A DNA stretch of 64,000 bases, from IMG/VR virus record IMGVR_UViG_3300042261_002385, positions 186,001-250,000 of that record; one strand, written 5' to 3'. Below are positions 7,921-57,809 of this stretch, piece by piece (position 1 is the first letter of the stretch; each line of letters starts with the position of its first letter). The translations under genes were made by a program, and so were the position numbers. A model generated the notes under the pieces. The model saw only the letters and a program-made list of their open reading frames with translations. It was not told the origin of the DNA and ran no database searches.

Positions 7921-8877
7921 TTATTGCTCCTTAATTAAATCACCTTCCTGTTCTGAGTCTGTGTCGCCGTGTGTAAAATCACCAAATTTTTGTATTACTG
8001 GTGTCTCAATTTCATCCAGAATATCTCTTTTACTTTTTGGTGAAATAAATTTTCTCAATCTATCAAGAATCTCAACTAATCCGTGTTTAGCGATTCTAGT
8101 AGCTACTCCAACAGATAGCATAAAAAAGTTTGCTATAACATCATCAACTGACATCTTATGAAGTCCTATAACAGTCATAATAGCATTCATTATAGGAATT
8201 AATATAGACGTATAAGCAAACATATCAATAATTCCACCAACAGCGGCTCCTAAATGTTTTGCTATAGTAGAAAAGATGTTATTGATTCCACTAAGTGCTT
8301 TGATAACTTTTTTAACTATACCATCACCTATACCCTGCATTCTTAACTCTTCAAGCATTGACTTAGAATCTTTAGTTAATATTTCTTCCTCTTCTGGTTT
8401 TGCTTTTTTCTCTTCTAAATAAACAATTGTAATTGAAGCTATCGTCAGTAATACAACTGTTTGTTTTGAGATTTCAACACCTAATGACATATTTTGCATC
8501 ATTTGAGAAACAACTGGATAAAGTGCTCCGATTCCAGCTCCAAAAGTCAATACCAATTTCGAATCAAGTTTTAAATCAGATATTACCTTTTTTTCGATAG
8601 ATTTATAAGTTGAGAGGTCTTCTTCTATATCATCTTCTTCTTTTGGTATAAAATCATCTAAGACTTGAAATATTTCATCACTATCAAATCCCTCACTTCT
8701 AAGTTTATGATAAAACTCAGCAAATTGAGTAGTATTTGGCATAGTTTTTCCAAACTCTTGCTCAAATCTTTTTAAGATTTCATTTTTTTCACCATCATCG
8801 GATTCATTCAGAAAATTCAAGAAATCATCTACAATAACTTCTTGCCTATAATAATCATCAAATCTTTGAATTTTCAT
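7921..8877 (-). CDS. Putative packaged protein with hydrophobic segments
   Basis: N-terminus MKIQRFDDY...FLNFLNES; several hydrophobic helices; AATATATA upstream. Confidence 0.65.
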   Translation of the reverse strand: MKIQRFDDYYRQEVIVDDFLNFLNESDDGEKNEILKRFEQEFGKTMPNTTQFAEFYHKLRSEGFDSDEIFQVLDDFIPKEEDDIEEDLSTYKSIEKKVISDLKLDSKLVLTFGAGIGALYPVVSQMMQNMSLGVEISKQTVVLLTIASITIVYLEEKKAKPEEEEILTKDSKSMLEELRMQGIGDGIVKKVIKALSGINNIFSTIAKHLGAAVGGIIDMFAYTSILIPIMNAIMTVIGLHKMSVDDVIANFFMLSVGVATRIAKHGLVEILDRLRKFISPKSKRDILDEIETPVIQKFGDFTHGDTDSEQEGDLIKEQ

Positions 8878-8914
8878 AATTGTATATATTAAAATCTAAA
8901 ATTAATCTTTGGAT

Positions 8915-9910
8915 TCAATCGTAGTCATAAACATCGTAAGTTCCATCAGTATTCATAAACCTCCAATATGTTCCTTTTGGCTCATAGTTGTAAGCAACGT
9001 CTTTATGAACATAGCTAAAAGTGTCCATATATGGATATTCTTCATCTGGAAATTCAAAAACATCTAAAATTTTTACAGCTGTAAGAATTGTTTCTTCTTT
9101 TCCTCTTTTTATAAACTTAGTCAGACCTGTATTCATTTTTTTATAATAAAAATCGTTCTCATCAGCCCATCTTGTAAATTTATAATAGTCTTTATCATAC
9201 ACAAAATAAACTCTATCCATAATATTCCTACCTTCTAAGTCTGTCCAAAGAAGAGCTCTTCCCAATATAGCACCTTCTTCATCAAGTAAAACAAGAAGTT
9301 TGACACTTGGACAATATTGATAAAAACTGACATATGGAACATCATTCATACAAGAGTTCATAAGTGGATTCATACCATTATCATAATCATTAAAATGATA
9401 CAGTCTTGATGAATATCCTTTACCTATTTCACTTTTTTCCCAAATTTCAAATGTTGACTGACCACTTAGTGATTTCCATTGGTTTACAAATTTTTCTATC
9501 TGAAAATCGGTATACTTGTCACCAAAAAAGGACCTAATGAATCTACCGATATTCATTTCAGTTCTTGCAAATTGTAACAAGCTATTGTCAAGTGATGGAA
9601 AATTGATTTTTTTTATAAAGTTTATGATTTCTTCTTGGTCATCAATTTGATAAGTATCGGATACATACTTGCTTACTTTAGCAGAATCGGTGTAGACTAT
9701 CTTATCATCTGATTCAGATACAGAAATAAAAGTCCACTTACTTAAAACTTTATATTGAGAACTACCATAAGTTGCCATTAATTGAAAATCTTTAGAAATC
9801 GGAGAATCAATACTTTCAACTCTTTTAATAAAATCTTTACTAAAAAGAGTAGGTAATTTGACATCAGTCTTAGATTCTAAAATAAACTCAAAGTATCTGA
9901 ATAACTTCAT
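8915..9910 (-). CDS. Hypothetical protein with CTS-like N-terminus
   Basis: MKLFRYFEFILES; C-terminal SCMND...GRALLW...MDRVY...YPYMDTF region looks like a conserved phage domain of unknown function. Confidence 0.7.
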   Translation of the reverse strand: MKLFRYFEFILESKTDVKLPTLFSKDFIKRVESIDSPISKDFQLMATYGSSQYKVLSKWTFISVSESDDKIVYTDSAKVSKYVSDTYQIDDQEEIINFIKKINFPSLDNSLLQFARTEMNIGRFIRSFFGDKYTDFQIEKFVNQWKSLSGQSTFEIWEKSEIGKGYSSRLYHFNDYDNGMNPLMNSCMNDVPYVSFYQYCPSVKLLVLLDEEGAILGRALLWTDLEGRNIMDRVYFVYDKDYYKFTRWADENDFYYKKMNTGLTKFIKRGKEETILTAVKILDVFEFPDEEYPYMDTFSYVHKDVAYNYEPKGTYWRFMNTDGTYDVYDYD

Positions 9911-9981
9911 ATACTATATATAAAAAGTTAGAAAATGAAATAAAATTATTAATATATAACTTAAAATAAAACCTTTTATAT

Positions 9982-10572
9982 ATGAAACATCTTAGAAGAT
10001 TTGAAAACTTTGACTTAGGTCATAGATTTTCTGATGAACAAGAACAAATTCAACCAATTGAATTAGACAAACCATCTCACGAAGAAGAAGACATTTACTC
10101 AGAGGATCCTAAAGAAGAAGAAGGTGATGAATATTGTGAACCATGTGATTCTGAAGAAGGTGATGAAACTGGAGATACAAGAAACTGGGGCGATGAAAAC
10201 ATTGCACTAGAATCTATTGCGAGTTTTAAAAACTTCCTTAATGAGAAAAAAGCTACGCCAGCTCAATTAGCTGCTAGAAAAGCTTTTGCTGAAAAAGCAA
10301 AAGAAAAGGCTGATAAGAAAGACGATAAAAAAGACGATAAGTCAAAAAAAGAGGTTTCATATAAAAAATCAGGTTTAAAAAATCCAGAGAAGGCAGACTT
10401 AGATAAAAACAAAAAAATCTCTGGTTATGAAAAGGCTAGAGGTAAGGCAGTCCAAGATGCAATTGAAGACGAAAAAGAAGAAAAAGGGAGTAAAGGTTTG
10501 ACTGCGGCTCAAAAGAAACTTCCAGAAGGTCCGAGAAAAGCTATTGAAGCTAAAAATAAAAATAAAAAATAA
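9982..10572 (+). CDS. Charged putative internal head protein
   Basis: MKHLRRFENF tag; internal SFKNFLNEK; acidic half then Lys-rich half; DLDKNKKISGYE EF-hand-like loop. Confidence 0.7.
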   Translation: MKHLRRFENFDLGHRFSDEQEQIQPIELDKPSHEEEDIYSEDPKEEEGDEYCEPCDSEEGDETGDTRNWGDENIALESIASFKNFLNEKKATPAQLAARKAFAEKAKEKADKKDDKKDDKSKKEVSYKKSGLKNPEKADLDKNKKISGYEKARGKAVQDAIEDEKEEKGSKGLTAAQKKLPEGPRKAIEAKNKNKK

Positions 10573-10576
10573 AAAA

Positions 10577-11254
10577 ATGAAGTACGTAAAAACATACGAA
10601 AACTTTAGTTCTCAAATAAACGAAGAAGAAGAAATCTTAAAATCTATAAGAAAAGCATTTGGAAAAGAATCAGAGGCTGATTTAGCTCCATTAAAAGAAA
10701 AGTTTGATGCTGAATTAGAGAATATGGAAAAACAAATTTTAGCTAATATGGAAAATCCTAATTCACCTATCAAAGTTCATTTGAATATACTCGATGAAGA
10801 TGAAGCAGAAGCTAAAAAAGAAACCACTTTCAAAGGGGTTGTTGCTCCTCTCTCAGCAGAAGCCTATAAGTCAAAAGACTATCAAGAAAGATGGGGTAGT
10901 AAATCATACTTACAACTTCTACAAGTTCAATACATTCAAGAAAATGGATGGTTTGATTACACGACTGGAAAATACTCTACACCTGAAGAAATGAAAGGAA
11001 AAGAGTTAGAGATTTGTAAAAATACCTGGGCCTTAATAAAACCTAAGATTCAAGAAAAAGCAAAAGAAATAAAATACAACGGACAGTTCCAAAAATACTC
11101 ATTTTGGAAGTTACTTTTTATGAGTAAAAAAGGAGCTTATCCTCAAGAAGGATTAGATAAAGAAGGCAAAGTTTATTTATGCCTATCGAATGAACTTTTT
11201 GATAAAACTGCCGAAGCGAAAGGAACTTATGCCTCTGGTGGCTTTCACAGATAA
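10577..11254 (+). CDS. Hypothetical protein with CTS-like N-terminus
   Basis: Start moved to the ATG at 10577: MKYVKTYENFSSQINEEEE. Confidence 0.75.
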   Translation: MKYVKTYENFSSQINEEEEILKSIRKAFGKESEADLAPLKEKFDAELENMEKQILANMENPNSPIKVHLNILDEDEAEAKKETTFKGVVAPLSAEAYKSKDYQERWGSKSYLQLLQVQYIQENGWFDYTTGKYSTPEEMKGKELEICKNTWALIKPKIQEKAKEIKYNGQFQKYSFWKLLFMSKKGAYPQEGLDKEGKVYLCLSNELFDKTAEAKGTYASGGFHR

Positions 11255-11262: not shown

Positions 11263-11841
11263 ATGAAACATCTAAAAAAATTTGAGTCTTTTTCAACATT
11301 AAACATAGATTTTTCAGATAACACGGAAATTGATGAGTTTAAATATGTGTATGAGGAAAACTTCATGGACAATGATGACTTTTATTTACTAAGAGAATAT
11401 ACATCTAAGTATGAAAAATATTTGTTAGACTCAAAAGATTCTCGTGATGGTGTTGTAAGATATAATTTACCGATAGATTCAGAAATTTTGACAGGAATGC
11501 TAAAAAAATATGAATCTAAAATTAGAGAATTAACAGACAATAATTTAATTTATCTATCAGACTATCCGATAGAATTAAGAAAATATGTTAAGGGTTGTTT
11601 TATGAGCCCACATAAAGACACACAAATTTATAAAATCCCACAGTATGAGTGTGTTTTTACCATTTCAAACACAACAGATTCTGTTACTAATGTAGATGGT
11701 GATGAAATTAGAACAATTCCAAACTCACTAATAATACTTAAAGCATGTGGTGCTACACATCATGTGACCGAAGTAAGTAGTGGAGAAAGAAACTTTTTGA
11801 AATTTATTTTCACAGAAACTGATGAACTATTAGAAGATTAA
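11263..11841 (+). CDS. 2OG-Fe(II) dioxygenase with CTS-like N-terminus
   Basis: HxD (PHKD), distal H (ATHHVTEV) and R (SGER) as in prolyl-hydroxylase-like enzymes; begins MKHLKKFESF. Confidence 0.8.
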   Translation: MKHLKKFESFSTLNIDFSDNTEIDEFKYVYEENFMDNDDFYLLREYTSKYEKYLLDSKDSRDGVVRYNLPIDSEILTGMLKKYESKIRELTDNNLIYLSDYPIELRKYVKGCFMSPHKDTQIYKIPQYECVFTISNTTDSVTNVDGDEIRTIPNSLIILKACGATHHVTEVSSGERNFLKFIFTETDELLED

Positions 11842-13508: not shown

Positions 13509-13617
13509 TAAGAAATTATTATTTTGTAAAAATTATATCAGAATTTTAGTTTTTAGTTTAAAAAATGAGGTTTTTTAAAGATTATGATTAATATATAAGA
13601 AAAAATCAGTTTTCTTT

Positions 13618-13803
13618 ATGCAAGTTCTACCTCATTACGATGAATTCGGAATCTACACAACAGTAGATGATGTTAAAAACTTTGTCAATTCACTTTTTGA
13701 CCAGGGCATTTCATCAGAGGAAGAGGTTTTTTCAAGTTGTATTACCGAATTTGGAAGAGCCAATTTTGATCTGATAGAGACAGCTCTTTATGGTGAAGAT
13801 TGA
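13618..13803 (+). CDS. Small hypothetical protein
   Basis: AATATATA upstream; overlaps next start; weak CTS-like VLPHYDEF. Confidence 0.55.
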   Translation: MQVLPHYDEFGIYTTVDDVKNFVNSLFDQGISSEEEVFSSCITEFGRANFDLIETALYGED

Positions 13804-14443
13804 TAAATTTAATGAATTCAGTATAGAGAATAAAACTCTATATGTATTTGACTTTGACGACACTCTTATGGTGACGCCAAGATATGAAGATATTACCGTA
13901 AAATACCTAACTGAAAACCTCACAGTAAAAGAACTTTTAGATAGAGCAATCAAAAGAATTGGAGTTACTAAAGACCAATTAAAAGTTCAAGATAGAAGAA
14001 TATTTATAGAAGATCCAGATAAACGATTTAAAGAAGAAAAAGAGTGGGCAAGAAAAGGCAATCGACTTTACTTAGTTCAACCAGATGAATTTTGTTATTT
14101 AGATGAAAGTCTACCAACACAGGTAAAAGAACTAGTTGAACTTTATAAGTCAGTTCAAGACAAGTGTATTGTGACAGCTAGACCTCAAAGTATGAGAAAT
14201 AAAATAGAATCAGTTCTCAAACAGTTTGGATTAGATAATCCAAAATGGGGGGTTCATATGTGTCCTAATAGTAGAATGAATGCTGGTAAATGGAAAGGAG
14301 AAAAGATTGTCGAACTCGTTAAGTTGACCGGTTTCAATAATGTAATCTTCTACGATGATAATTCAAAATATATTAGAGGAGCAAAACAGGTAGTCTCTGA
14401 GAAACTACCGGATTTAAATTTTAAATGTATTAAGGTAGTTTAG
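13790..14443 (+). CDS. HAD-superfamily phosphatase (RNA-repair/PNKP-like HAD)
   Basis: Motif I VFDFDDTL, motif II VTAR, K, motif IV FYDD; N-terminus MVKIDKFNEF. Confidence 0.8.
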   Translation: MVKIDKFNEFSIENKTLYVFDFDDTLMVTPRYEDITVKYLTENLTVKELLDRAIKRIGVTKDQLKVQDRRIFIEDPDKRFKEEKEWARKGNRLYLVQPDEFCYLDESLPTQVKELVELYKSVQDKCIVTARPQSMRNKIESVLKQFGLDNPKWGVHMCPNSRMNAGKWKGEKIVELVKLTGFNNVIFYDDNSKYIRGAKQVVSEKLPDLNFKCIKVV

Positions 14444-15094: not shown

Positions 15095-15739
15095 TTAGTC
15101 TTTGATCCAAACTTTTGTTCCAGCTGGCCAATCCAACAAGTCACCTGCTGTTTTTCCAGTTCCAGACCAATCACCTGAGAAAATATCACCAAGTGTATCA
15201 CCTTTACCATGAGGATCACTTCCGATAGTTTTTAAAGTTGTAATGATTTCTGATTTATCTGGACCCTGAACTCCTTTTGTTAAAAATTCAACTCCTTTAT
15301 CATAATCACCTCCACCAAAATCCTTAACAGCTTTTACAAAATCTTCTGGTGAGGACTTTGGATTTAAATCACTACCTGTGTATTTATTCAAAGTTCCTGT
15401 AATTCCTCCTTTATCTGCCGGTAAAAACTTACCATCAGTGTGCGGTGGTGGCGGTGGCTCAACATTTGCTGCTTTGTAAATCATAGCAGCTCCAGCAATT
15501 GTCAATGCTAATCCAAGTCCAAACTGGCTATTTTTTTCTTTGATTATAATACTTCTAAGATATTTAGCAGCTTCATTAGGATCTTGCTTATATAAATCTA
15601 AAAGTTTCTGCTGTTGAGACTCTGGTAGTTTTTGAATTTCATCACCAGCTGATTGACCAGTTACGGTTCTTCTCATTTTAGCTGCTAACTCTTTCAAACC
15701 CTCATTAGTAAACTCTCCGAATTTTTCAATTTTACTCAT
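15095..15739 (-). CDS. Putative packaged membrane protein
   Basis: MSKIEKFGEFTNEG tag; one TM segment (FGLGLALTIAGAAMIY); PPPPP linker; Gly-rich C-domain. Confidence 0.75.
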   Translation of the reverse strand: MSKIEKFGEFTNEGLKELAAKMRRTVTGQSAGDEIQKLPESQQQKLLDLYKQDPNEAAKYLRSIIIKEKNSQFGLGLALTIAGAAMIYKAANVEPPPPPHTDGKFLPADKGGITGTLNKYTGSDLNPKSSPEDFVKAVKDFGGGDYDKGVEFLTKGVQGPDKSEIITTLKTIGSDPHGKGDTLGDIFSGDWSGTGKTAGDLLDWPAGTKVWIKD

Positions 15740-15748: not shown

Positions 15749-17464
15749 TTATTTATTGTTGTAGTTTTTAAAAGTGTAAACTTGACTTTCTTTCAATTCT
15801 GCCTGAAAGGATGTCATAATCTCTTTCAACGTCGTATTAAAGTCTCTCATATCAGCTCCGAATTCACCAAGTGAAGCATACATATTTTCACCTTCGAATT
15901 GTAAAGTTCTTTTAGCTAATCTTGCAATTTTCTCAGCAACAACTTTTCTTTTGTTTTTATCAGATATAACTTCAATACTCTCATTATATAATGGTCCGAA
16001 ATCAGACATAGTTTTTGAATATTTACCATAAAGATGCTCATAAACTTCTTCATAAAGAGCCTTTATTGATTTTTTAGCATCTACGTCCATTTTCTTGTCT
16101 AAGATATTTTTGATAAATTCGTCAGTGATTCCGATTCCTTTATCTTTTTCATCTTTTAATACTTTAAGTGATTTCTGAGCATTTTTAAATGCTTGTGTTA
16201 AATGTTCTTCAGCTGAAGTAATTTCTACATTTCTTGGTTGTTTAGAAAACTCTTTAGAAAATTCTTTTTCAAAAATTGAATAAGTTAAAATAGACTCTCT
16301 TACTTTTTGTCTTTGGACTCTTGCTACTTCTTCAGCATTCTTTTTTCTAATTCTTTCTTCATCTTCTGTTGAACCAGATTCACCGGCCAACCTAACTCCT
16401 TCAAAAGAAATAATCATACTTTGAAGAGCTTGAAGATTTTTAATCATAGTAGGGTAAAGAGATTTAAGTGGTTTAGCATTTTTTTCTTCTTCAGCTGAAA
16501 TTGCTATTTGGTCACCTTCTTTTTCACCAGAACTAGAAGTTACTACAGTGATGTCTGTGTTTTCAACATAAGTGATATCTATATCCTGAATAAAGATATT
16601 TACCACACCATTTCCTTCTAAGTTACCACCAAAAGCCATATGTAAATAAGCCAAACAGTCTTCTACAGTTGGATAAGGTTTACAAACCCAGATTGCTAAA
16701 ATAATTAGACCAGCCATAAGTAACATACCACCAATAGCAGCCATAGCTACAGGTCCTAAACCTAAAGTTAAACCAGCTAAACTAATACCAGCCACTTTTA
16801 AAACTCCTATAATAATTAAACCGATTGTTGTCTTTTTCATGATTTGAGAAACGACACCGTTAAATCTAGCATTTTTAATACCTAAAGCATGAGCTATTTT
16901 TTCAAATACACCATAATATTTTACTTCATCATCACCAATAGCGTATGGACTATCAGCTTCATTTAATTTAACTTGATTACCAACTGATTGTAATTTATCA
17001 GGAGTCACACCTGCTTCTTGCCAGTTTACAGCGGACTTAGCTTTTTGACACAAAATCTGCCAAATTCTTTGAAAATTAGGTCTATTATTTTCATCACATA
17101 AACCGTTTGAAACAATAAAGTCCTTGAAACCACTCAACATATCTTTGATTTTAGTCCAAGTTTTTGTTCCGATTTCTTTTATTTTATTGAAAATTGATCC
17201 TGCTAACTTACTTAAGGAAAAGTTTTTAAAGAAATTTACAACTCCGGTAAAAAATTTACTAATTGCATCTTTAACATTAGTATAAACATTTGATACTGCT
17301 TGTTTTCCTTTTTGGATAAGATTTCCGATAAACTCTTCAGTTATTAGCGATTCTAATGGATTTATTATATCTTCAGCCGTGATGTTTTGATCAGTCAAAA
17401 ACTGACATTCCATCAATTTAGCCTCGTATAGTTTGGAGTAATTTGTGAAACTTTGAACTCTCAT
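15749..17464 (-). CDS. Putative packaged protein with TM hairpin; C-terminal domain shared with 54912..57809
   Basis: MRVQSFTNYSKLYEA; long hydrophobic stretch TTIGLIIIG...ILAIWV; DKGIG and VVAEKIAR shared with the 966-aa ORF. Confidence 0.78.
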   Translation of the reverse strand: MRVQSFTNYSKLYEAKLMECQFLTDQNITAEDIINPLESLITEEFIGNLIQKGKQAVSNVYTNVKDAISKFFTGVVNFFKNFSLSKLAGSIFNKIKEIGTKTWTKIKDMLSGFKDFIVSNGLCDENNRPNFQRIWQILCQKAKSAVNWQEAGVTPDKLQSVGNQVKLNEADSPYAIGDDEVKYYGVFEKIAHALGIKNARFNGVVSQIMKKTTIGLIIIGVLKVAGISLAGLTLGLGPVAMAAIGGMLLMAGLIILAIWVCKPYPTVEDCLAYLHMAFGGNLEGNGVVNIFIQDIDITYVENTDITVVTSSSGEKEGDQIAISAEEEKNAKPLKSLYPTMIKNLQALQSMIISFEGVRLAGESGSTEDEERIRKKNAEEVARVQRQKVRESILTYSIFEKEFSKEFSKQPRNVEITSAEEHLTQAFKNAQKSLKVLKDEKDKGIGITDEFIKNILDKKMDVDAKKSIKALYEEVYEHLYGKYSKTMSDFGPLYNESIEVISDKNKRKVVAEKIARLAKRTLQFEGENMYASLGEFGADMRDFNTTLKEIMTSFQAELKESQVYTFKNYNNK

Positions 17465-45817: not shown

Positions 45818-46231
45818 ATGAAACACTTAAAATCATATGAATTATTTGAATCCGTTGATAAGACTTTTGTTAAAGACTTTTTAACAGATTTCGGTACTCT
45901 TATCTCACTAAACTTTAGTCAAATTACAAAAATGGGTAAGGATGAAAATTCAACAAAAGAACTTACTCTTATGATGCAACAACTTAGAAAGCCTATAATA
46001 AATGGACAAACTTATTTTGATTTCCTGAAAGATAATATTAATACAATTCCAAACAATCCTAAATTACTTTCATCTCTTTTAGGTATTATTAGAGATTTTT
46101 TAATTTATATCGAACCAAGAATTAAACAATTTGTAACTGATGAACCAGTGAAAAATGGCATAAATTACAAAGAAGCTTGGTTAAAAAGGATAGATAAAAT
46201 TAAAAATGACTATAAATTGATAATTAATTAA
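45818..46231 (+). CDS. CTS-tagged hypothetical protein
   Basis: MKHLKSYELFES. Confidence 0.75.
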   Translation: MKHLKSYELFESVDKTFVKDFLTDFGTLISLNFSQITKMGKDENSTKELTLMMQQLRKPIINGQTYFDFLKDNINTIPNNPKLLSSLLGIIRDFLIYIEPRIKQFVTDEPVKNGINYKEAWLKRIDKIKNDYKLIIN

Positions 46232-50310: not shown

Positions 50311-53300
50311 TTATCCATTGATAAATCCACCGGCTGCGATAGCTCCTGTTCTAAGTATTGTCACATTGTTTACAATGATACCCATACCTTTGATTGGTTC
50401 TACATAAGTATCAAGAACACCAATTTGGTTATCAATAATTTCTGGAGTATTATTTTCTTCATCCATTTTATTGAAGTAATTGTATAAACCATTCTTACTT
50501 ACATATGTTTCACAGATAACATCCGCTCTTAATTTAATATCAGCTCTTACATCAGCTGTGTTGAATTTCCACTGGAAGTCTAACAACATTCTTGATAATT
50601 CTCTTTCAAGCTCAATCAATACCTCTCTTACGTGGATGTAAGATAGTGCTGATTTTACAAGTGTCTGAGCTGTATTTTCAGTCTCAATAATGAATCCTCT
50701 GTTTCTTTTGAACACAAGTGGGTTCATTTGAGCTTGATTCAAGAATTCAATATCTTCTGGAGTGAAGTCTTGTTCAATAGAATTGATACCTGTAATTCTA
50801 CCATTCGTAACACCAGCTGCAATAGTCCATGGAGTTACATTTCCTACATTTGAAATATGTTTAGCCATGTAAGTTGTTGCAACAAACGGTGCTGGTGGAT
50901 GGTCTAACGGTCTACCATTATCATTAATATTAACATAAGGGAAGAAGTAACCTACACAAGTAGTTCCTGCTCCATCACCAAATGAGTAAAGGAATGCTGG
51001 ATTACTTTCTGGATCTCCTCCTTTAGCAACGTATTCCATCTGTAAAACACCTTCAGTATTTACGAAAGTAGGTGAAGAAGAATTTTTAAACATTCTCGCA
51101 GATGGCATGTTGATAAATCCAAAAGCATCTAATCTATCACCACAAATATCTAGTAACTGTTGTTTGCTTCTTTCTGTTAAACCTAATCCAAAAGAGTCAA
51201 CTAAGTATCTGAAGTCAATTGCCTCTTTGTTTGTCAATGCCTTAAATAGTGGAGTTCCTTTAGCAACTAAATTCAAAATTGAATTTTGTCTTGCTTCAGT
51301 TCCATCAGGCATCGAAGCGTTTCTAATTCTAAATCCTTTCAACGAAAGTGCTTTATAAGTAGTTGCGTATTGATCTACTGTAGTATATCTTTGAGTCTGT
51401 AATTCACCACCTGAGAATCTTGTTGCGATTCTAGAATCACAAGTCACCTCAGTCAATGAAGCATCACCCGAATATTGTCTTTTTGACAAAATTCTTGTTA
51501 ATTTTCTTGGATATTGACCAGTCTGAAGAGCAGTTGAATCATAGTATGCCTCTAAGAAATCTCCAACTTTTACCTCAGAATATCTCTCACCATTTATAAG
51601 AATCTTATTTGGAACTTGAACATACCCAGCTGGAATCTCAATCTCAATAGTTTGTTTGTAGTTTGATTTTTCAGATTTGATATAGAATGTATTGTTAGCC
51701 AACGCAGCAACATCAACATCTGTTGTCAAATCTGAGTCTTTAAACTCCACATACAATGTAGAGCTGCTATCCGTATACATTCTTAAATAATGTTTTACTA
51801 AATAGTCGTATACTCTATTCACATCAGTAAGTTGTTCAAAAACTACTTCTTCCGAAACAGTGTAAGCGTAATACTCAGATGAGTTAGAACCATTTCCATA
51901 TCCCAGAAGTCCAGCAATTTGTTGAGGTGTTTTACCATTGAAAGCTGTTACTTGATTTGTTGCAAGTGTAAATGAACCAGTATTTAACGTTGAATCGGGG
52001 AAATATAGTTGCTCAAAAGTAGCTAAATTTATTTCAGTGTCCCAGTTTGGCACATCTGATTGAAATACTATATAATCATATCCTGCCCACGACTGGGTAG
52101 TTCCACCGTTTGTTGCCTCCTCTCCATCTACGAATAATACACTAACAGTAGTTCCAAGTAAAGTTGCGTTACTGGCAGATGCTCCAGAATCACCTAAGAA
52201 TAATCTGTTACTGTAAAAGTAGTCTTTTGTATTAATTTGACCATCATAATTTTTAGTGTAGAAGTTTGAATATTTACCCACAACACCTATGTTGTTGAAA
52301 TCAGCAGTGTCCGATTTAGTCTGAACACCTTCACTTCCAAGTATAAATTCATTATCTTCAGTATAAATTACTAAATAACCATTTAGAATATCAGCCAATT
52401 GAGCTGTAGTCAATCCAGTATCCAACCTAAATGACTTATTAAGAACTGAACTTTGAACAATGTCAGAAATAGTTATATTTTCAAAACTATATTTTTCATA
52501 AGTAACTGGATTAAGGACTATTGACATTCTGTTTTTGTTTGGACTGTCAATCAAGTTTACTAATCTATTAAACATTTTGAATTTTCTCCACTGTTTATAG
52601 TTTGTAACAGATGGTGTTTCATTTGTGCCTGGAAACTCAATTTTGATGATGCCAGAACCAGCTGTTACTTCGGAAATATAATAATCACTTGATGAATAAG
52701 TTCCAAAGTCATAATCAATATACTCGGACGTTCCAACCGTAACATCTTCAACATTAAATGACAGTGGTGATACAAACGATTGAGAAGCTACTCCAAGTTC
52801 GATGTATCCTAAAACTATGTCAGTAGCCCCAACTGCTGGATTGACACCAACTGTCAAACTGTTTACCACTGAAATCTCACCAGTATTATCTAATACAAAT
52901 GCTGAAGAGTAAGTAGCTAAAGTAGTACTAAAAGGATAATCGGTAGCATTCATAGTCAAAGTAGCAGTAGCAGCGATAGGAACATAAGTATTTCCTATGA
53001 CTGCATAAGCACCAGGACCAACACTATATGTTACACAAATAGAAGTTGTAGCTGTAACAATTCCAGGAGTAGATGAAACTAAATCAACGTTGTAAACCGA
53101 TCCTTCACCAAACCAAGCTGTTCTCTCTGAGTTTTCCACAATACCACTTGTTAACATAGATTCAGCAAACTCGTTACCGGGAGTCAAATCGAATCCGTAA
53201 GCGTGAGGTGTTTGTGATACATAAGAGTAAGAACCATAAGATGGACCCAAATCACCTAACATCGCAGTCACATTACCAGGTAAGTCAAGTGGAGTAGATA

Positions 53301-54309
53301 CTATTTTGATATCTTCTGTGATTGTCTCTCTGTATGATAGAAAATCAATTGTGTTTTCACCACCATCAGCAATTGTATTACCTAATAAGTCTAACACACC
53401 GTTGTAGTAGTCAGCCTCAACTAAGTCATTGTTGAATGCACAGAAAACACCAGTTCTATCAGTATCTCTATTGATAGTAGTTTCAATAAAGATGTTTCTA
53501 CCATTTAAATCTCTAAAATATGGAATCAAAGAAAGACCTTCGTAGTAAGCCAATGTTGTTACATTTCTATCGTTTGCGAAGTTTCTAATCTGAGCTTTTC
53601 TCAAACCGGATGCGTTGAAGTATGAACTCCATCTTGGATCAACAGCTAACTCTTGGTAGTTAGACCAATCACCTGCAACAATAACAACATCTACAAGATA
53701 ATCAGAAGCGAAGTCTTGAGGATTAACATAAGATGGCATTTTCTCAATTGAACCATACCATTCTAACAATGTTCTATCAAAACCAGTCAAAGTTGATTTA
53801 AAAATAAATACTGAAACATATCTGTCTGAAAGATTCGTAATGTTGAATGCTCTTTCAGTATATCCAGAATTATTTTTAGTAAGATTAATAAATGAATCAG
53901 TATCTCTCTTCCAGAAACCTGTTGTATCAAAGAATCTTCTGTAAGGTCCTTCTCTTTCGATATCATTATTATATCCTGCTGAAGAAGAAAGTGATTGATA
54001 TTCAATTTTATCTAAAGTATCATCAGTTAATAATAGGTTCATAGCGAAAACTGGCGCCGTTTCTACCATTTTAGAAACTGTTCTATGAAAGAATGAACCT
54101 TTTCTTTCTAATCCTCTATCTAATTGACCGAAAATAGACTCCAACTCATTAGTTGTAGTTATTCTAATCGGTGTATTAACAGGCCCTTTTCTTGAAACAC
54201 CAATAACGAGGTTTGTGATACCTTCAACTACTGGGCTTGTGATTACAGACTTGTCAAATTCTTCTAAGAAGATTCCTGGTCTCTTGTATTTTCCAATTTG
54301 AATTGCCAT
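50311..54309 (-). CDS. gp18: Tail sheath protein with large central insertion
   Basis: N-terminal RPGIFLEEFD, GVSRKGPVNTP, FGQ; C-terminal NPL, TAQTLVKSALSYIHVREVLI, DEENNTPEIIDN, VEPIKG. Confidence 0.93.
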   Translation of the reverse strand: MAIQIGKYKRPGIFLEEFDKSVITSPVVEGITNLVIGVSRKGPVNTPIRITTTNELESIFGQLDRGLERKGSFFHRTVSKMVETAPVFAMNLLLTDDTLDKIEYQSLSSSAGYNNDIEREGPYRRFFDTTGFWKRDTDSFINLTKNNSGYTERAFNITNLSDRYVSVFIFKSTLTGFDRTLLEWYGSIEKMPSYVNPQDFASDYLVDVVIVAGDWSNYQELAVDPRWSSYFNASGLRKAQIRNFANDRNVTTLAYYEGLSLIPYFRDLNGRNIFIETTINRDTDRTGVFCAFNNDLVEADYYNGVLDLLGNTIADGGENTIDFLSYRETITEDIKIVSTPLDLPGNVTAMLGDLGPSYGSYSYVSQTPHAYGFDLTPGNEFAESMLTSGIVENSERTAWFGEGSVYNVDLVSSTPGIVTATTSICVTYSVGPGAYAVIGNTYVPIAATATLTMNATDYPFSTTLATYSSAFVLDNTGEISVVNSLTVGVNPAVGATDIVLGYIELGVASQSFVSPLSFNVEDVTVGTSEYIDYDFGTYSSSDYYISEVTAGSGIIKIEFPGTNETPSVTNYKQWRKFKMFNRLVNLIDSPNKNRMSIVLNPVTYEKYSFENITISDIVQSSVLNKSFRLDTGLTTAQLADILNGYLVIYTEDNEFILGSEGVQTKSDTADFNNIGVVGKYSNFYTKNYDGQINTKDYFYSNRLFLGDSGASASNATLLGTTVSVLFVDGEEATNGGTTQSWAGYDYIVFQSDVPNWDTEINLATFEQLYFPDSTLNTGSFTLATNQVTAFNGKTPQQIAGLLGYGNGSNSSEYYAYTVSEEVVFEQLTDVNRVYDYLVKHYLRMYTDSSSTLYVEFKDSDLTTDVDVAALANNTFYIKSEKSNYKQTIEIEIPAGYVQVPNKILINGERYSEVKVGDFLEAYYDSTALQTGQYPRKLTRILSKRQYSGDASLTEVTCDSRIATRFSGGELQTQRYTTVDQYATTYKALSLKGFRIRNASMPDGTEARQNSILNLVAKGTPLFKALTNKEAIDFRYLVDSFGLGLTERSKQQLLDICGDRLDAFGFINMPSARMFKNSSSPTFVNTEGVLQMEYVAKGGDPESNPAFLYSFGDGAGTTCVGYFFPYVNINDNGRPLDHPPAPFVATTYMAKHISNVGNVTPWTIAAGVTNGRITGINSIEQDFTPEDIEFLNQAQMNPLVFKRNRGFIIETENTAQTLVKSALSYIHVREVLIELERELSRMLLDFQWKFNTADVRADIKLRADVICETYVSKNGLYNYFNKMDEENNTPEIIDNQIGVLDTYVEPIKGMGIIVNNVTILRTGAIAAGGFING

Positions 54310-54375
54310 ATTGTTTTATATTTTTTTTAATTTTAAAGTATATATAAAAAAGAAAAAACGATATTTTTTCTTTTT

Positions 54376-54915
54376 TTACTTTTTCATTTGAATTTCTTGA
54401 GTGTCTTTTTTCAATTCCTTCTCAGTATCAATCATAAGTTTTTTGTGTTCAGCCATCAGTTTTTGAAGTTCCTTTGACTTTTCTGCTAAAATCTTTTGCA
54501 AATCACCTAGTTTTACGTCAATTTCTTTTAATTGAGTATCTAATTTTTTAATACTCGCTGGATCTTTTGTCAATCCCTTCTCCTGAACATATTTATCTTT
54601 ATTAATATTAGCATCAACTCTTGCTTGGCTATTTCCGTTGATTTCATTTTGAATTCTACAAATTTTAAGATATTCTACTAAGAATCTATTTTTATTCTCT
54701 TTTTCAGGAAACATTTTCTTTAACTCTTGTTCTATTTCTAAATCATTCTTTGTAGAGTTATAAAGCTGGTCTATTTTAGGTTTTTTTTCTCGATACTCTT
54801 TTAAATCAGATTCTACATCATTCAAGCTTTGTTTAGCCAATTTTTCATCTGGTCTATCGGTTGTTGATATAGCTAATACTTCTTTAAAAAAATCATATTT
54901 TCTTAGATATTTCAT
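54376..54915 (-). CDS. CTS-tagged coiled-coil protein
   Basis: MKYLRKYDFFKE; long coiled coil. Confidence 0.75.
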   Translation of the reverse strand: MKYLRKYDFFKEVLAISTTDRPDEKLAKQSLNDVESDLKEYREKKPKIDQLYNSTKNDLEIEQELKKMFPEKENKNRFLVEYLKICRIQNEINGNSQARVDANINKDKYVQEKGLTKDPASIKKLDTQLKEIDVKLGDLQKILAEKSKELQKLMAEHKKLMIDTEKELKKDTQEIQMKK

Positions 54916-57809
54916 TTTGAAATCACCCCAGGGGTAAATTTACCCTCATCATATTTTTTATCAACAACTTCTCTATAATTGATAAACGCTGGTTTCACAG
55001 CTTTCAAAGCAGTAGCAACTGAATCTTTAGACTCAAGTTTCAATATATTTTGTCCTTTGAACTTATTATCTTCCATTTGTCTCATCACCAACCAATTTAC
55101 AGAAGTAATCTTAATTGTTTCAGTTCTTGTTTTTGGCTTATCCTCTTCTTTAACAATTCCTTTGATTTCTATTTCCTTAGCTCTGTTGTTTCCAACATTT
55201 TCCAAAGCCTTTTTAGTCATAACAGTGTGAATAACAGGATAAGGACCACTGCCTAATCTATCTCTTAATTCAGGATTAATATCTGAGTCGCCTTTACCAA
55301 TCTCAGTAGAGGGATGCTCGCTTTGTATTAGATTTCTGAAGTAAGCCATAGTTTTAGACATCATCACATAATATTTATCGTTGGCAATTTCATTAACAAA
55401 GACATACCAGTGGACAATTTTACCTTCAGTATCCTTACCATTTATTTGAAAAGTTGTAAATCTAAATTTACTTTCTTTTAAAACTTCATCAGCGGTCAAA
55501 GATGATGATTTAGCAAATTGTAAGTTTGATACGGTAATAGAGTCAGCATTTTGATTATTAATTTCAATATCGTTTTTACCAGTTTTCTTATCTTTCATAC
55601 CCAATTGAACATCTGAATTTTTCTCAAAAAATTCATTTGCAGTTTCACCAAAGTATTTTTCAATAGCTTTCTTTTGAGCCCCAGCTGAATCACCACCACT
55701 ACCTGATTTATAAAGATTATCACCATCTAAAAGGTCTGTCATAAGTTGTCTAAGTGCGACTCCTGCTCCTTCTCTAACATTTCCAGCACCATCATCTAAA
55801 ACAGTTTCTTTTGCAAATATTGGAGAAAATCTTGTATCAGCAAGAACATCCATCACTGCATCTTCCCAAATATTGAATGTCTTTTTATGTCTATATGGTC
55901 CGTGTTCAGTAGCACTAGGCTCACCAGAACCACCACCAAAAGCAGTATATTCATTATATGTTAATCTATCGACTGCACCACCTGATCTATTACCAGGGAT
56001 TACATCCGTGGTATGTAGCTTATAGGCTCTATTAAATAATCTTACGATTTCAATAATAGGGTTCATACCATTGATAACGATTGATTTTCCTTGTTTCTTA
56101 GCAGCATCTTCTACTTTTGTCTCAACTTCTTTAACTTCTTCTTCTGAAAGTAAAAAAGCCTCAAAGTCTAAGTTTTCATCAAAATATTCCTTTATTTCTT
56201 TAGAAATCTCAGCAGATTTATCTTCTTTGTTTTCTTTATCATCATCACCCTCTGCTTCTCTAATTAAAGTTAAGTAAGAACCATATTTTAATAACTTTTG
56301 TGAAACTGATTCTTCTTTCTTTTCAACTTTTTCTTCCTTAGCTAACTCATCAGGGTTAATCTTTTTGAGTTCTTTCATAGTATCAACGAACTCTTTAAGA
56401 GGTTTTCCTAATTCACCCAATGGTCCATAAAGATTCTGACCATCAAATTGGATAGCTCTCATCGTAAATCTTGCTATCTTTTCAGCGACAACAATTTTTT
56501 TGTTTTTATCTTTGATTACATCAAGACTTTCTTTGAAGAGAGCATCTGTAGGGGCGTTTAGTGTAGCCTTTTTATCACCAATCAAATATCTTAATACTTC
56601 TTTATACAAAGACTTAACTTGAATTTTAGTTTGTTCATCAACTGATTTTTCGGTGATTGCCTTTAGAAAATCAAAAGTGACTCCGATGCCTTTGTCCTTA
56701 GGATCTTCCAATACTTCACAGGCTTTTTTCAATTTGTTATAAGCCTGAGTGACATGATCTTCTTTCTTAGTTCCGACATTTCTATTTACACCACCACCAG
56801 TTCCTATACCTGTAGGACTTCCACCTTGTCCAATAGCAATTGGGCCTTCTTCAAAAAGATAACCTTCTTTAACTAAAGACAATTTAATTTTTAGGTCCTT
56901 TGTTAATTGAAGTTTATTTTTGTCCATTTTAGACTTTTCAGCCTTTATGGTATAAGGCTCTAATGTTTTTGAATTAGAAGACCAAATCTGATCAGTAGTT
57001 AATTTGTTTTTGTTAATTTTAACATCTTTTTGAATTACTTCAATAGTCTCACCACCTTTTGTGATATAAACATAATCCTCAGGTGCTGACGCAATTGCAT
57101 TTGGTGTAAATTTTTTGTAGTTTGCTAATACCAATGACAGTGATCTTAAGTTCTTTATCATAACTGGATATCCAGACTTTATGGAAATCTTTCCACCTGT
57201 TGATTCTTCAGAGTCGGAATCTTCTTCTTCATCATCGGTTGTTTTCTCTGCATCTTCTGAAAGAGGACCACCTTTACCATCAGTATCTTTAAACTTATTA
57301 AGAAATTCTAAAAACTCTTCCAGAGCTTTCAATATAACTTGCTTTGATTCTTCCGACTTCTCACTTACCTCGAGTGCCTCTAAATTATCAATAGTATTCT
57401 GTGTAATGTCTTTAATTTTTCCAACTTTTTCACCATCATCAACTGCTTTTTTAAGAACTCCTAAAATAGATGATATTTGAACTTTAGAAATATCTTCTTG
57501 GTCTTCTTTCGATAAGGTTCTAATTGCTGATTCACTAACTAATCTTTCGAATTGTGACTTCATTTGTTTAGCAACTAACGATATTCTACCCATATCAACT
57601 CCGACCCCAATCTTACGTATTACAAAATTTATAAATCTACCCAAAAGAGAGTCACCCCATCTTACGTTATTACCGAATGCTCCAGATCCAGGGGCATTTT
57701 CTTCTAAAATCAACTTTGTAGTCAAGTCTTCCAACAATTTATCTTGTTGAACTTTTTTTCTTTCACTTATATTCTTTAGGTAATTATCTCTTGAGTGTAA
57801 ATATTTCAT
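54912..57809 (-). CDS. Large putative packaged polyprotein-like protein
   Basis: ATG 57809 MKYLHSRDNYLKNISE; internal LILEE, YLFEE, KLLKYGSYLTLIREAE; domain shared with 15749..17464. Confidence 0.8.
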   Translation of the reverse strand: MKYLHSRDNYLKNISERKKVQQDKLLEDLTTKLILEENAPGSGAFGNNVRWGDSLLGRFINFVIRKIGVGVDMGRISLVAKQMKSQFERLVSESAIRTLSKEDQEDISKVQISSILGVLKKAVDDGEKVGKIKDITQNTIDNLEALEVSEKSEESKQVILKALEEFLEFLNKFKDTDGKGGPLSEDAEKTTDDEEEDSDSEESTGGKISIKSGYPVMIKNLRSLSLVLANYKKFTPNAIASAPEDYVYITKGGETIEVIQKDVKINKNKLTTDQIWSSNSKTLEPYTIKAEKSKMDKNKLQLTKDLKIKLSLVKEGYLFEEGPIAIGQGGSPTGIGTGGGVNRNVGTKKEDHVTQAYNKLKKACEVLEDPKDKGIGVTFDFLKAITEKSVDEQTKIQVKSLYKEVLRYLIGDKKATLNAPTDALFKESLDVIKDKNKKIVVAEKIARFTMRAIQFDGQNLYGPLGELGKPLKEFVDTMKELKKINPDELAKEEKVEKKEESVSQKLLKYGSYLTLIREAEGDDDKENKEDKSAEISKEIKEYFDENLDFEAFLLSEEEVKEVETKVEDAAKKQGKSIVINGMNPIIEIVRLFNRAYKLHTTDVIPGNRSGGAVDRLTYNEYTAFGGGSGEPSATEHGPYRHKKTFNIWEDAVMDVLADTRFSPIFAKETVLDDGAGNVREGAGVALRQLMTDLLDGDNLYKSGSGGDSAGAQKKAIEKYFGETANEFFEKNSDVQLGMKDKKTGKNDIEINNQNADSITVSNLQFAKSSSLTADEVLKESKFRFTTFQINGKDTEGKIVHWYVFVNEIANDKYYVMMSKTMAYFRNLIQSEHPSTEIGKGDSDINPELRDRLGSGPYPVIHTVMTKKALENVGNNRAKEIEIKGIVKEEDKPKTRTETIKITSVNWLVMRQMEDNKFKGQNILKLESKDSVATALKAVKPAFINYREVVDKKYDEGKFTPGVISK

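What the first reader, a model, noticed from the sequence alone, without database searches (positions are those of the whole stretch)
7921..57809. About 17 mostly unrelated ORFs share a T4 capsid-targeting-like N-terminal tag: a large packaged cargo
Seen: N-termini of the form M-K/S-[HYK]-[ILV]-x-x-[FY]-[EDN]-x-F, usually followed by [ILT]-N-E or L-x-E, at 7921-, 8915-, 9982+, 10577+, 11263+, 13790+, 15095-, 15749-, 19491-, 20614-, 24732+, 44459+, 45818+, 54376-, 54912-, and weakly 13618+ and 44862+. Downstream domains differ (dioxygenase, HAD, UVR, TM proteins, coiled coils). The tag is absent from the replication enzymes and the sheath/tube. Most have AATATATA upstream of the gene or its operon. 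Established: T4 IPII/IPIII begin MKTYQEFIAE, are packaged through this sequence and are cut after Glu by gp21. Inference: a genome-wide addressing system loads many effectors into the head for injection.
Basis: partly seen in the sequence, partly recalled or inferred. Interest (0 to 1): 0.88.

Follow-up and report, generated by a model that had tools for sequence, protein, structure and literature searches.

The report
Cleavable capsid-loading tag in a megaphage
About a sixth of the genes in this piece of a giant uncultured phage start with the same short peptide, probably a removable address label that loads many unrelated proteins into the virus head, as phage T4 does for a few proteins.

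Summary
Eleven ORFs in the window start with M-K-[HY]-[LVI]-[KR]-x-[FY]-[EDN]-x-F or its M-[SV]-K-I register. Five or six more match loosely.

The window belongs to a 522-kb metagenomic megaphage contig related to LR745206. In that complete 635-kb relative, 106 of 897 ORFs carry the tag, against 4 of 3169 internal Met sites. A strict DNA pattern for the tag finds 110 stretches in IMG/VR, a scrambled control finds 0, and 596 Gb of cellular genomes yield about one real case.

With the tag removed, 218 tagged proteins fall into 160 BLAST clusters. Ser9 uses both serine codon families, so selection acts on the peptide.

The phage has T4-type head genes: a portal, a Gp23 capsid protein, and a gp21-like protease fused to a repeat-rich scaffold. 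A Φ-x-E or N-E site follows the tag. An invariant I-N-E lies in the capsid propeptide and L-N-E follows the protease domain. Tagged genes are enriched behind the AATATATA motif that also precedes structural genes.

Best reading (confidence about 0.6): a T4-CTS-like cleavable capsid-targeting propeptide, greatly expanded. Packaging itself is untested, and the T4 peptide does not match the tag profile.

The parts
9982..10572 (+). Tagged ORF, 196 aa, canonical tag MKHLRRFENF. Very acidic and basic cargo. Family conserved in LR745206 and IMG/VR.
   Evidence: (22.0 bits). Promoter-like motif at 9951-9958.
10577..11254 (+). Tagged ORF, 225 aa, MKYVKTYENF followed by Q-I-N-E|EEE. Second gene of the 9982 unit.
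   Evidence: (21.7 bits).
11263..11841 (+). Tagged ORF, 192 aa, MKHLKKFESF. Third gene of the 9982 unit.
   Evidence: exact pattern match; 23.7 bits.
19491..20144 (-). Tagged ORF, 217 aa, MKYVKTFESF ... T-N-E|G. C-terminal TM-like segments. Paralog of 20614-21237.
   Evidence: (23.2 bits). Motif at 20168-20175.
20614..21237 (-). Tagged ORF, 207 aa, MKYVKTFESF ... T-N-E|G. Paralog of 19491-20144.
   Evidence: Motif at 21259-21266.
24732..25091 (+). Tagged ORF, 119 aa, MKYLKTFESF S-P-I-N-E|EEE. The true start is 24732, not the upstream ATG at 24684.
   Evidence: 23.4 bits. The promoter-like motif at 24700-24707 lies inside the longer ORF.
45818..46231 (+). Tagged ORF, 137 aa, MKHLKSYELFE|S (the Y-x-[IL]-F-E-S variant common in LR745206).
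   Evidence: (19.7 bits).
54376..54915 (-). Tagged ORF, 179 aa, MKYLRKYDFFKE|V, immediately upstream of the sheath gene. Its ortholog in LR745206 is also tagged.
   Evidence: (18.7 bits).
13790..14443 (+). Tagged ORF, 217 aa, second register MVKIDKFNEF S-I-E|N. The tag sits directly before HAD motif I (weak HAD/PNK-phosphatase hits).
   Evidence: (13.2 bits).
15095..15739 (-). Tagged ORF, 214 aa, MSKIEKFGEF T-N-E|G.
   Evidence: 13.9 bits.
44459..44824 (+). Tagged ORF, 121 aa, MSKIHNYDDF L-N-E|E. Its ortholog in LR745206 is tagged.
   Evidence: (13.4 bits). Motif at 44447-44454, 4 nt from the ATG.
7921..8877 (-). Loose member, 318 aa, MKIQRFDDYY, with F-L-N-E|S at residues 22-25. TM-like segments.
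   Evidence: (ortholog N-terminus conserved). Motif at 8883-8890, 5 nt from the ATG. Below the PSSM threshold.
8915..9910 (-). Loose member, 331 aa, MKLFRYFEF I-L-E|S.
   Evidence: 4.3 bits. Motif at 9915-9922, 4 nt from the ATG.
13618..13803 (+). Loose member, 61 aa, MQVLPHYDEF. Heads the unit that contains 13790.
   Evidence: 3.6 bits. Motif at 13590-13597.
15749..17464 (-). Doubtful member, 571 aa, MRVQSFTNYSKLYE|A. Similar to 54912-57809. TM-like segments.
   Evidence: Motif at 17492-17499.
54912..57809 (-). Doubtful member, 965 aa, MKYLHSRDNY. First gene of the sheath operon. The N-terminus is family-specific and conserved in LR745206.
   Evidence: (8.4 bits). Motif at 57831-57838.
44862..45815 (+). 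Degenerate member, 317 aa, MKVKKFSKEN. Its short LR745206 ortholog has a canonical tag.
50311..54309 (-). Tail sheath. Untagged late structural gene preceded by the same promoter-like motif (54339-54346). Reference for 'late'.
61157..63292 (+). Large terminase. Untagged, preceded by the motif (61127-61136).

Best explanation
The shared N-terminus is a short (9-13 residue), amphipathic, cleavable capsid-targeting propeptide.

Proposed mechanism:
1. Late in infection, proteins carrying the tag bind the scaffold core of the assembling prohead. In this phage the core is a gp21-type protease fused to a repeat-rich scaffold.
2. The Gp23-type shell closes around the core and the bound proteins.
3. 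The protease cuts after the Glu of the Φ-x-E (often [LIV]-N-E) site that ends the tag, as it also cuts the capsid propeptide and the scaffold.
4. The mature cargo stays in the head and enters the host with the DNA.

Shown here: the tag, its modularity, its restriction to viruses, peptide-level selection, the adjacent Glu site, the link to the promoter-like motif, and the T4-type head genes in the same contig.

Inferred: binding to the core, cleavage, retention in the head, and injection.
For: 1. The tag sits on unrelated proteins. With the first 14 residues removed, 218 tagged proteins form 160 BLAST clusters, 128 of them singletons. Most have no Pfam or PHROG family. In a nucleotidyltransferase (L045), homologs from cultured phages align only from residue 13-24 onward, so the tag is an add-on.

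2. It is genome-wide and clade-wide. Counts are 106/897 ORFs in LR745206, 5/99 in a 100-kb sample of LR756500, a weaker variant in LR756501, and none in a 100-kb sample of Lak-A1.

3. It is specific to viruses. There are 110 IMG/VR stretches against 4 in 596 Gb of cellular genomes, and 3 of those 4 are spurious 12-17-aa ORFs. A scrambled-order control pattern gives 0.

4. Selection is on the peptide. Ser9 is encoded 46 times by AGY and 40 times by TCN, and Leu, Tyr and Phe codons also vary.

5. The phage has T4-type head machinery.
- In LR745206: portal PF07230 at E 2.7e-57 and capsid protein PF07068 at E 1.8e-26.
- In the window's own 522-kb contig: a Gp23-family capsid protein and a 699-aa protease-scaffold with the GEFDHP and VSSR motifs.
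- A 134-sequence profile of the protease domain against T4 gp21 gives hhalign probability 96.9%, E 1.7e-10.

6. Cleavage logic is present.
- An N-E dipeptide occurs in residues 8-18 of 39-53% of tagged proteins against 5% of untagged ones. The residue after the Glu is mostly S, A, E, G or N.
- S-I-N-E|N-A-Y is invariant in the capsid propeptide across 57 distinct sequences.
- L-N-E|S after the protease domain aligns with I-T-E|S of T4 gp21.
- The scaffold has more than 20 conserved Φ-x-E sites in 14-residue repeats.

7. The parallel with T4 is positional. In the T4 CTS, residues 4 and 7 drive targeting and residues 8 and 10 drive processing (PMC9026906). In the tag, position 4 is L/I/V in 100% and position 7 is F/Y in 98% of cases. 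T4 internal proteins are likewise diverse and share only the CTS (PMC3012670; PMC5694885).

8. Timing fits. AATATATA lies within 60 nt upstream of 48/106 tagged against 112/768 untagged ORFs in LR745206 (OR 4.8, p 4e-12). The same motif precedes the portal, protease-scaffold, TerL and sheath genes. A gp55-like sigma factor is present.

9. The tag is amphipathic. The mean helical hydrophobic moment is 0.47 against 0.31 for untagged N-termini.
Against: - There is no virion proteome and no cultured relative, so packaging and cleavage are inferred.
- The T4 IPII/IPIII propeptide scores -14 bits on the tag profile. Homology of the tags themselves cannot be claimed.
- The number of tagged genes (12% of ORFs in LR745206, 16-25% in the window) is far above any known packaged set.
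- Some tagged proteins are metabolic enzymes (NMNAT-like, HAD) or have TM-like segments. Packaging them is not an obvious need.
- In about 12 IMG/VR loci the tag follows an upstream ORF in frame with no stop codon, so it is not always strictly N-terminal.
- The AATATATA motif also precedes the RNR large-subunit gene, so 'late' is not proven.
- Pfam's own S77 threshold is not reached by the protease (E 0.005).
Confidence: 0.6

Rival explanations
1. The tag is an address label for a destination other than the capsid interior. Candidates are another phage assembly (tail or baseplate), a phage-made compartment, the membrane, or a phage-encoded chaperone or protease (a ClpS gene lies next to TerL).
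For: The tag is an amphipathic peptide on unrelated proteins. Several cargo proteins have TM-like segments. A ClpS homolog is encoded at 63289-63573. The very large number of tagged proteins is easier to place in a cell-wide destination than in a head.
Against: The tag has no hydrophobic core, unlike the true lipoprotein signal at 14430-15014. The Met-Lys start is not an N-degron for ClpS. The adjacent Glu site matches sites in the capsid propeptide, the protease and the scaffold, which ties the tag to the prohead protease. No other targeting machinery was identified.
Confidence: 0.15
2. The shared start is an expression cassette rather than a targeting signal. In this reading, a promoter plus the first codons is optimised for translating (near-)leaderless late mRNAs, or acts as a recombination module that shuffles gene cassettes, and the peptide has no function of its own.
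For: The promoter-like motif often ends only 4-5 nt before the ATG. The tag residues are mostly encoded by A/T-rich codons. Tagged genes cluster in variable regions.
Against: Ser9 uses both unrelated codon families about equally, and other positions vary synonymously. Many tagged genes lie inside operons with no promoter upstream. Highly expressed late structural genes with the same motif lack the tag. The tag is essentially absent from low-GC cellular genomes. A conserved Glu site follows it.
Confidence: 0.12
3. The N-termini are a relic of descent. One ancestral gene was duplicated many times, the bodies diverged beyond recognition or were replaced, and the first ten residues persist without a common function.
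For: LR745206 contains true paralog groups among the tagged genes (clusters of 6 and 3). The window has one paralog pair (19491/20614).
Against: Of 160 clusters, 128 are singletons. The tag is kept across contigs of 17-44% GC while orthologous bodies are only 30-50% identical. The tag is fused to folds of independent origin: NMNAT-like, HAD, DUF3008 and DUF5824. Purifying selection on a 10-residue relic with no function is unlikely.
Confidence: 0.08

Closest known systems
Capsid targeting sequence (CTS) of phage T4 internal proteins IPI/II/III and Alt
   Same: Both are short N-terminal propeptides (10-20 residues in T4) on otherwise unrelated proteins. Both have key hydrophobic or aromatic residues at positions 4 and 7 and end in a Φ-x-Glu site for a gp21-family prohead protease. 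Both phages have a homologous portal, Gp23 capsid protein (including its propeptide) and protease. In both, the cargo is hypervariable.
   Different: The consensus differs, and the T4 peptide scores -14 bits on the tag profile. P2 is often Asn. The tag length varies (Glu at position 9, 11 or 13). The family is expanded from a handful of proteins to about 100 per genome. The protease is fused to the scaffold. Nothing has been tested experimentally.
Propeptides of inner-body and ejection proteins of phiKZ-like giant phages (phiKZ, SPN3US)
   Same: Many head-internal proteins (about 50 in SPN3US) are processed after Glu by a protease distantly related to gp21. The propeptides are thought to act like a CTS (PMC5694885).
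   Different: Those propeptides are mostly more than 100 residues long, share no consensus peptide, and use S/A/G-x-E motifs. Here the signal is a 9-13-residue consensus tag.
Phage P1 Dar antirestriction proteins with an N-terminal capsid-targeting region
   Same: An N-terminal region directs defence-countering proteins into the head (PMC9024508 is listed for 'capsid targeting sequence'; the details are from my own knowledge).
   Different: P1 uses a longer region and an ordered dependency on other Dar/Hdf proteins. It has no shared short consensus and no T4-type protease site.
Encapsulin cargo-loading peptides
   Same: A short peptide appended to unrelated enzymes directs them into an HK97-fold shell (my own knowledge, not tested here).
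   Different: The encapsulin peptide is usually C-terminal, binds the shell protein directly, is not cleaved, and serves a cellular compartment rather than a virion.

Membership tests
T4-type capsid targeting sequence (CTS) | Short peptide at the extreme N-terminus of otherwise unrelated proteins | tested here: met
   Counts are 11 canonical ORFs in the window and 106/897 in LR745206, against 4/3169 internal Met sites. Trimmed cargo forms 160 clusters from 218 proteins. Caveat: in about 12 IMG/VR loci the tag is in frame with an upstream ORF.
T4-type capsid targeting sequence (CTS) | Targeting determinants at residues 4 and 7 (PMC9026906) | tested here: inconclusive
   The same positions are the most conserved ones. 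Position 4 is L/I/V in 106/106 and position 7 is F/Y in 104/106. Function at these positions cannot be tested in silico.
T4-type capsid targeting sequence (CTS) | Ends in a prohead-protease site (hydrophobic-x-Glu, cut after Glu) | tested here: met
   A Φ-x-E ending at residues 8-16 occurs in 65-81% of tagged against 24-29% of controls. N-E occurs in 39-53% against 5%. The residue after the Glu is small. The motif is present; cleavage itself is not shown.
T4-type capsid targeting sequence (CTS) | Phage has a gp21-family protease, a scaffold core, a gp20 portal and a gp23 shell | tested here: met
   The genes lie in the window's own 522-kb contig, about 18-28 kb beyond the window's right end.
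T4-type capsid targeting sequence (CTS) | Sequence similarity to the T4 IPII/IPIII propeptide | tested here: not met
   The T4 peptide scores -14 bits on the tag PSSM, at the 68th percentile of untagged N-termini. Only K2 and F7 agree.
T4-type capsid targeting sequence (CTS) | Mature protein present in virions, tag removed, cargo delivered to the host | not testable with these tools
   There is no cultured relative and no proteome.
Peptidase S77 (T4 gp21 prohead protease), for the 699-aa protein next to the capsid gene | Family profile match and catalytic His/Ser/Asp motifs | tested here: met
   Pfam alone falls below its cut-off (E 0.005, 16.8 bits vs 27). A 134-sequence profile against T4 gp21 gives hhalign probability 96.9%, E 1.7e-10 over 146 columns. 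GE..HP, SSR and the D of Y-D-I-V align and are invariant. The AlphaFold model was too poor to use.
T4 late promoter / gp55 system | A/T-rich -10-like octamer upstream of late genes, plus a gp55-type sigma factor | tested here: inconclusive
   [AT]ATATATA is enriched upstream of structural and tagged genes. A 121-aa protein is 25% identical to T4 gp55 (pairwise E 4e-4; Pfam Sigma70_r2 E 0.005). The octamer differs from the T4 late-promoter consensus, and no transcript data exist.
Sec / lipoprotein signal peptides | Hydrophobic core after a basic N-region | tested here: not met
   The tag is amphipathic with acidic residues at positions 8-9. A genuine lipoprotein-type signal in the window (14430-15014) looks quite different.
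phiKZ-type long propeptides | Propeptides of about 100 residues or more, without a shared consensus | tested here: not met
   The tag is 9-13 residues long with a strong consensus.

The most novel reading that the evidence does not exclude
Megaphages of this clade use a 9-13-residue cleavable tag to load on the order of a hundred different, mostly orphan proteins (10-20% of their genes) into the capsid. The virion would then deliver a proteome-scale arsenal together with the DNA, and the injected set could be read directly from metagenomic sequence.
Probability: 0.45. Interest if true: 0.88.

Novelty: new variant of a known kind. Interest (0 to 1): 0.72.

Why it matters
Huge phages are known only from metagenomes, and most of their genes are orphans. 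A sequence label that marks packaged proteins would assign a location and a time of action to about a tenth of the proteome without any culturing. It would point to candidate takeover and counter-defence proteins. It would also show that the T4 logic, diverse cargo sharing only a capsid address, is ancient and can be scaled up by two orders of magnitude.

The hypothesis is directly testable by semi-tryptic searches of virus-fraction metaproteomes and by reconstitution with the protease-scaffold and capsid genes.

Tried and rejected
- **Cultured relatives with virion proteomes.** tblastn of a cargo family found nothing in 50,697 phage records. A UvsW gene next to a tagged gene has its best hits only in uncultured megaphages and Lak phages.
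- **Literature.** No paper in the library contains the tag strings. Searches on megaphage plus prohead protease, and on CTS, gave no report of such a tag.
- **Function of the cargo.** Pfam and PHROGs are almost empty for tagged proteins, so the cargo says little about its destination.
- **Protease structure.** A PDB sequence search with a shallow profile found nothing relevant. The AlphaFold model had pLDDT 34.5 and was not used for a fold search.
- **Tag as a mimic of one scaffold repeat.** A repeat PSSM separates tagged from untagged N-termini only weakly (p 0.017, no positive scores). I kept this as speculation only.
- **ORF 26896-27429.** I first counted it as tagged. Its ortholog shows that the N-terminus belongs to a conserved domain, so I dropped it.
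- **Hits in cellular genomes.** Three of four are 12-17-codon chance ORFs. The fourth looks like phage DNA in a Bacteroidetes bin.
- **In-frame upstream ORFs.** Pfam gave only DUF3008 and DUF5824.

Full report
**What the window is.**
The window has 30% GC. Its tail sheath is 68.6% identical to that of the uncultured 635-kb megaphage LR745206, and more distantly related to other 460-735-kb phages and to Lak phages. There is almost no nucleotide-level match to any deposited phage. Exact protein look-ups place the window on JGI metagenome contig Ga0451520_0000008, which is 522,324 bp long. IMG/VR holds the same sequence as a 436-kb contig. Untagged genes in the window include:
- ribonucleotide reductase, a DnaB helicase, an XPD-like helicase, the N-terminal part of a family B polymerase, thymidylate synthase and Fpg;
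- a Ro60/TROVE protein and a glycan-synthesis cluster;
- sheath, tube-like proteins, large terminase and ClpS.

**The observation.**
All coordinates in the finding are real ORF starts.
- Eight ORFs begin M-K-[HY]-[LV]-[KR]-x-[FY]-[ED]-x-F.
- Three begin M-[SV]-K-I-x-x-[FY]-x-[ED]-F.
- Five or six others are looser.

The back-translated strict pattern matches five times in the window at up to two mismatches, against 0.01 expected from shuffles. None of 349 internal Met positions in the window reaches the profile threshold. That profile was seeded from the window, so the independent tests are the ones that count:
- LR745206, fetched in 13 pieces and analysed piece by piece, has 106 of 897 ORF starts above 8 bits against 4 of 3169 internal Met sites.
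- Eighty loci of relatives centred on the capsid gene have 89 of 1664 against 15 of 8713.
- The strict pattern finds 110 stretches in IMG/VR, almost always at an ORF start. A pattern with the same codons in scrambled order finds none.
- In 596 Gb of bacterial and archaeal genomes it finds four. Three are chance ORFs of 12-17 codons. The fourth looks like phage DNA in a Bacteroidetes bin.

**The tag is a module, and it is selected as a peptide.**
- With the first 14 residues removed, 218 tagged proteins (window, LR745206, IMG/VR) form 160 BLAST clusters, 128 of them singletons. In the window only 19491/20614 are paralogs.
- Tagged proteins almost never match Pfam or PHROGs. The HAD call for 13790 is weakly supported.
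- Where a fold is recognisable, the tag sits just in front of it. In a nucleotidyltransferase from L045, homologs from cultured phages align only from residue 13-24. In 13790 the tag and a S-I-E site directly precede HAD motif I.
- Orthologs in LR745206 keep the tag while the protein bodies are 30-55% identical.
- Ser at position 9 is written 46 times with AGY and 40 times with TCN, and Leu, Tyr, Phe and Lys codons vary. This rules out a DNA or RNA element as the selected unit.
- Residues 2-12 have a higher helical hydrophobic moment than other N-termini, 0.47 against 0.31.

**A Glu site follows the tag.**
- Beyond the ten positions fixed by the IMG/VR search, positions 11-13 read [LVI]-N-E in 30 of 94 distinct proteins. 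[ILVMFT]-N-E lies within residues 11-22 in 55 of 94.
- Across all sets an N-E dipeptide occurs in residues 8-18 of 39-53% of tagged proteins against 5% of untagged N-termini or internal controls. The residue after the first hydrophobic-x-Glu is mostly S, A, E, G or N.
- In LR745206 the common forms end F-N-E|S or [IL]-F-E|S. The Glu therefore sits at position 9, 11 or 13 depending on the variant.

**The head machinery is of the T4 type.**
- LR745206 encodes a T4-like portal (PF07230, E 2.7e-57) and a Gp23-family capsid protein (PF07068, E 1.8e-26). Directly upstream of the capsid gene lies a 707-aa protein whose N-terminal 200 residues resemble T4 gp21.
- The window's own contig has the same genes 18-28 kb beyond the right end of the window. 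These are a 590-aa Gp23-family protein and a 699-aa protease-scaffold carrying the GEFDHP and VSSR motifs.
- Pfam alone is below its threshold for S77 (E 0.005). A search of 1.84 billion representatives found 3375 relatives. A 134-sequence profile aligns to T4 gp21 with hhalign probability 96.9% and E 1.7e-10 over 146 columns, with the catalytic His, Ser and Asp positions matched.
- The C-terminal two thirds of this protein hold 11-12 tandem 14-residue repeats (N-I-[AS]-Y-S-E-Y-[IL]-A-E-N-L-D-K) and more than 20 conserved hydrophobic-x-Glu sites. That is what one expects of a scaffold the protease chops up, as T4 gp22 is (PMC5694885).
- The capsid protein has an N-terminal propeptide that resembles that of T4 gp23 near its start.
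- That propeptide contains S-I-N-E|N-A-Y, invariant in 57 distinct sequences and in the window's own phage. By my reading, its place corresponds to the F-L-T-E|A stretch of gp23.
- L-N-E|S after the protease domain aligns with I-T-E|S of gp21.
- The same [LIV]-N-E motif therefore lies in the capsid propeptide, right after the protease domain, and at the end of the tag.

**Comparison with the T4 capsid targeting sequence.**
- According to reviews, the first ten residues of IPIII suffice for packaging. Residues 4 and 7 matter for targeting and residues 8 and 10 for processing. The internal proteins of T-even phages are diverse and share only the CTS. CTS fusions carry foreign proteins into the head (PMC9026906; PMC3012670; PMC5694885).
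- In the megaphage tag, positions 4 (L/I/V, 100%) and 7 (F/Y, 98%) are the most conserved after Met1.
- The resemblance is one of architecture, not of sequence. The T4 peptide scores -14 bits on the tag profile and shares only K2 and F7.
- I therefore file the tag as working like a CTS in a phage with homologous head machinery. I do not file it as a demonstrated homolog of the T4 CTS.

**Timing.**
- [AT]ATATATA lies within 80 nt upstream of 10 of 17 tagged and 11 of 49 untagged genes in the window (p 0.013). Apart from 26896-27429, which was later dropped as not tagged, the tagged genes without the motif all follow a tagged gene that has it, in the same orientation.
- In LR745206 the figures are 48/106 against 112/768 (odds ratio 4.8, p 4e-12).
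- Untagged genes with the motif include the portal, protease-scaffold, terminase, sheath, tube-like and large fibre-like proteins. This fits a late promoter.
- A 121-aa protein is weakly similar to the T4 late sigma factor gp55.
- The motif ends either 4-5 nt or about 19-25 nt before the ATG. The short spacing suggests nearly leaderless transcripts.
- The motif also precedes the RNR gene, so the 'late' label is an inference.

**Distribution.**
- Many tag-bearing IMG/VR contigs of 20-200 kb carry the same capsid gene as LR745206, or T4-like genes such as gp18, gp20, gp32, UvsW and the gp55-like factor. They are probably fragments of related large phages.
- The tag is present in LR756500. It occurs in a weaker form in LR756501. 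It was not seen in 100 kb of Lak-A1.

**Verdict.**
The best explanation is an expanded, CTS-like, cleavable capsid-loading tag (confidence about 0.6). Four points count most against it. There is no proteomic evidence. The number of tagged genes is unprecedented. Some cargo consists of metabolic enzymes or membrane proteins. In some loci the tag follows an upstream ORF in frame. The rivals are a different destination, an expression or recombination cassette, and a relic of gene duplication. Each is less well supported, for the reasons given in its entry.

Noticed in passing
L222:7822-9921 (window's own contig, about 20 kb beyond the right end); also LR745206 198546-200669: The prohead protease is fused to a scaffold-like region made of 11-12 tandem 14-residue repeats, N-I-[AS]-Y-S-E-Y-[IL]-A-E-N-L-D-K. 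Each repeat carries hydrophobic-A-E sites. The representative library holds 3375 relatives, and most of the top hits are 500-900-aa fusions.
   Followed up: partly
IMG/VR loci L016, L028, L034, L058, L084, L086, L089, L108; L002/L023; L003/L056/L091; L008; L079: The strict tag follows an upstream ORF in the same frame with no stop codon. Upstream partners are a DUF3008-type ~105-aa ORF ending in a KKKRKK-like run, a DUF5824 protein, or another tagged ORF. The tag can therefore sit at a junction between modules, through fusion, a polyprotein or re-initiation.
   Followed up: partly
window 17521-18942 (-): The family B DNA polymerase ORF is only 473 aa (exonuclease domain plus the start of the polymerase domain). 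It is followed by a promoter-like motif and an unrelated 571-aa ORF. The polymerase seems split or truncated, and the rest was not located.
   Followed up: no
window 19171-20144 and 20275-21237: A duplicated two-gene cassette. A 91-92-aa hydrophobic protein on the + strand faces a tagged ~210-aa protein with C-terminal TM-like segments on the - strand.
   Followed up: partly
window 24684-25091 (+): The longest ORF starts at 24684, but the promoter-like motif (24700-24707) and the tag show that the real start is 24732. The tag can be used to correct start-codon calls.
   Followed up: yes
window 8883-8890, 9915-9922, 44447-44454 and LR745206 genome-wide: The AATATATA-type motif often ends only 4-5 nt before the ATG (72 of 174 upstream occurrences in LR745206). 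This implies leaderless or nearly leaderless transcripts. At 9915-9922 the palindromic motif serves divergent genes on both strands.
   Followed up: partly
window 841-2295 (-): A Ro60/TROVE-domain protein with a vWA domain is encoded next to the ribonucleotide reductase gene. This is unusual for a phage.
   Followed up: no
window 63289-63573 (-): A ClpS (N-end-rule adaptor) homolog lies directly beside the large terminase gene. It is conserved in LR745206 and is found on contigs from many samples (84 index blocks).
   Followed up: no
window 30464-36070 (+): A cluster of glycan-synthesis genes: pyruvyl transferase, methyltransferase, DegT-type aminotransferase fragment, hexapeptide acetyltransferase and two GT2 glycosyltransferases.
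   Followed up: no
window 14430-15014 (-): A small M54 (archaemetzincin-like) metallopeptidase with a lipoprotein-type signal peptide sits among the tagged genes. It serves as a contrast to the tag.
   Followed up: no
window 15749-17464 (-) and 54912-57809 (-): These two large proteins with loose tags resemble each other beyond the N-terminus (BLAST E below 1e-3). The second heads the sheath operon, so they may be structural paralogs rather than cargo.
   Followed up: partly
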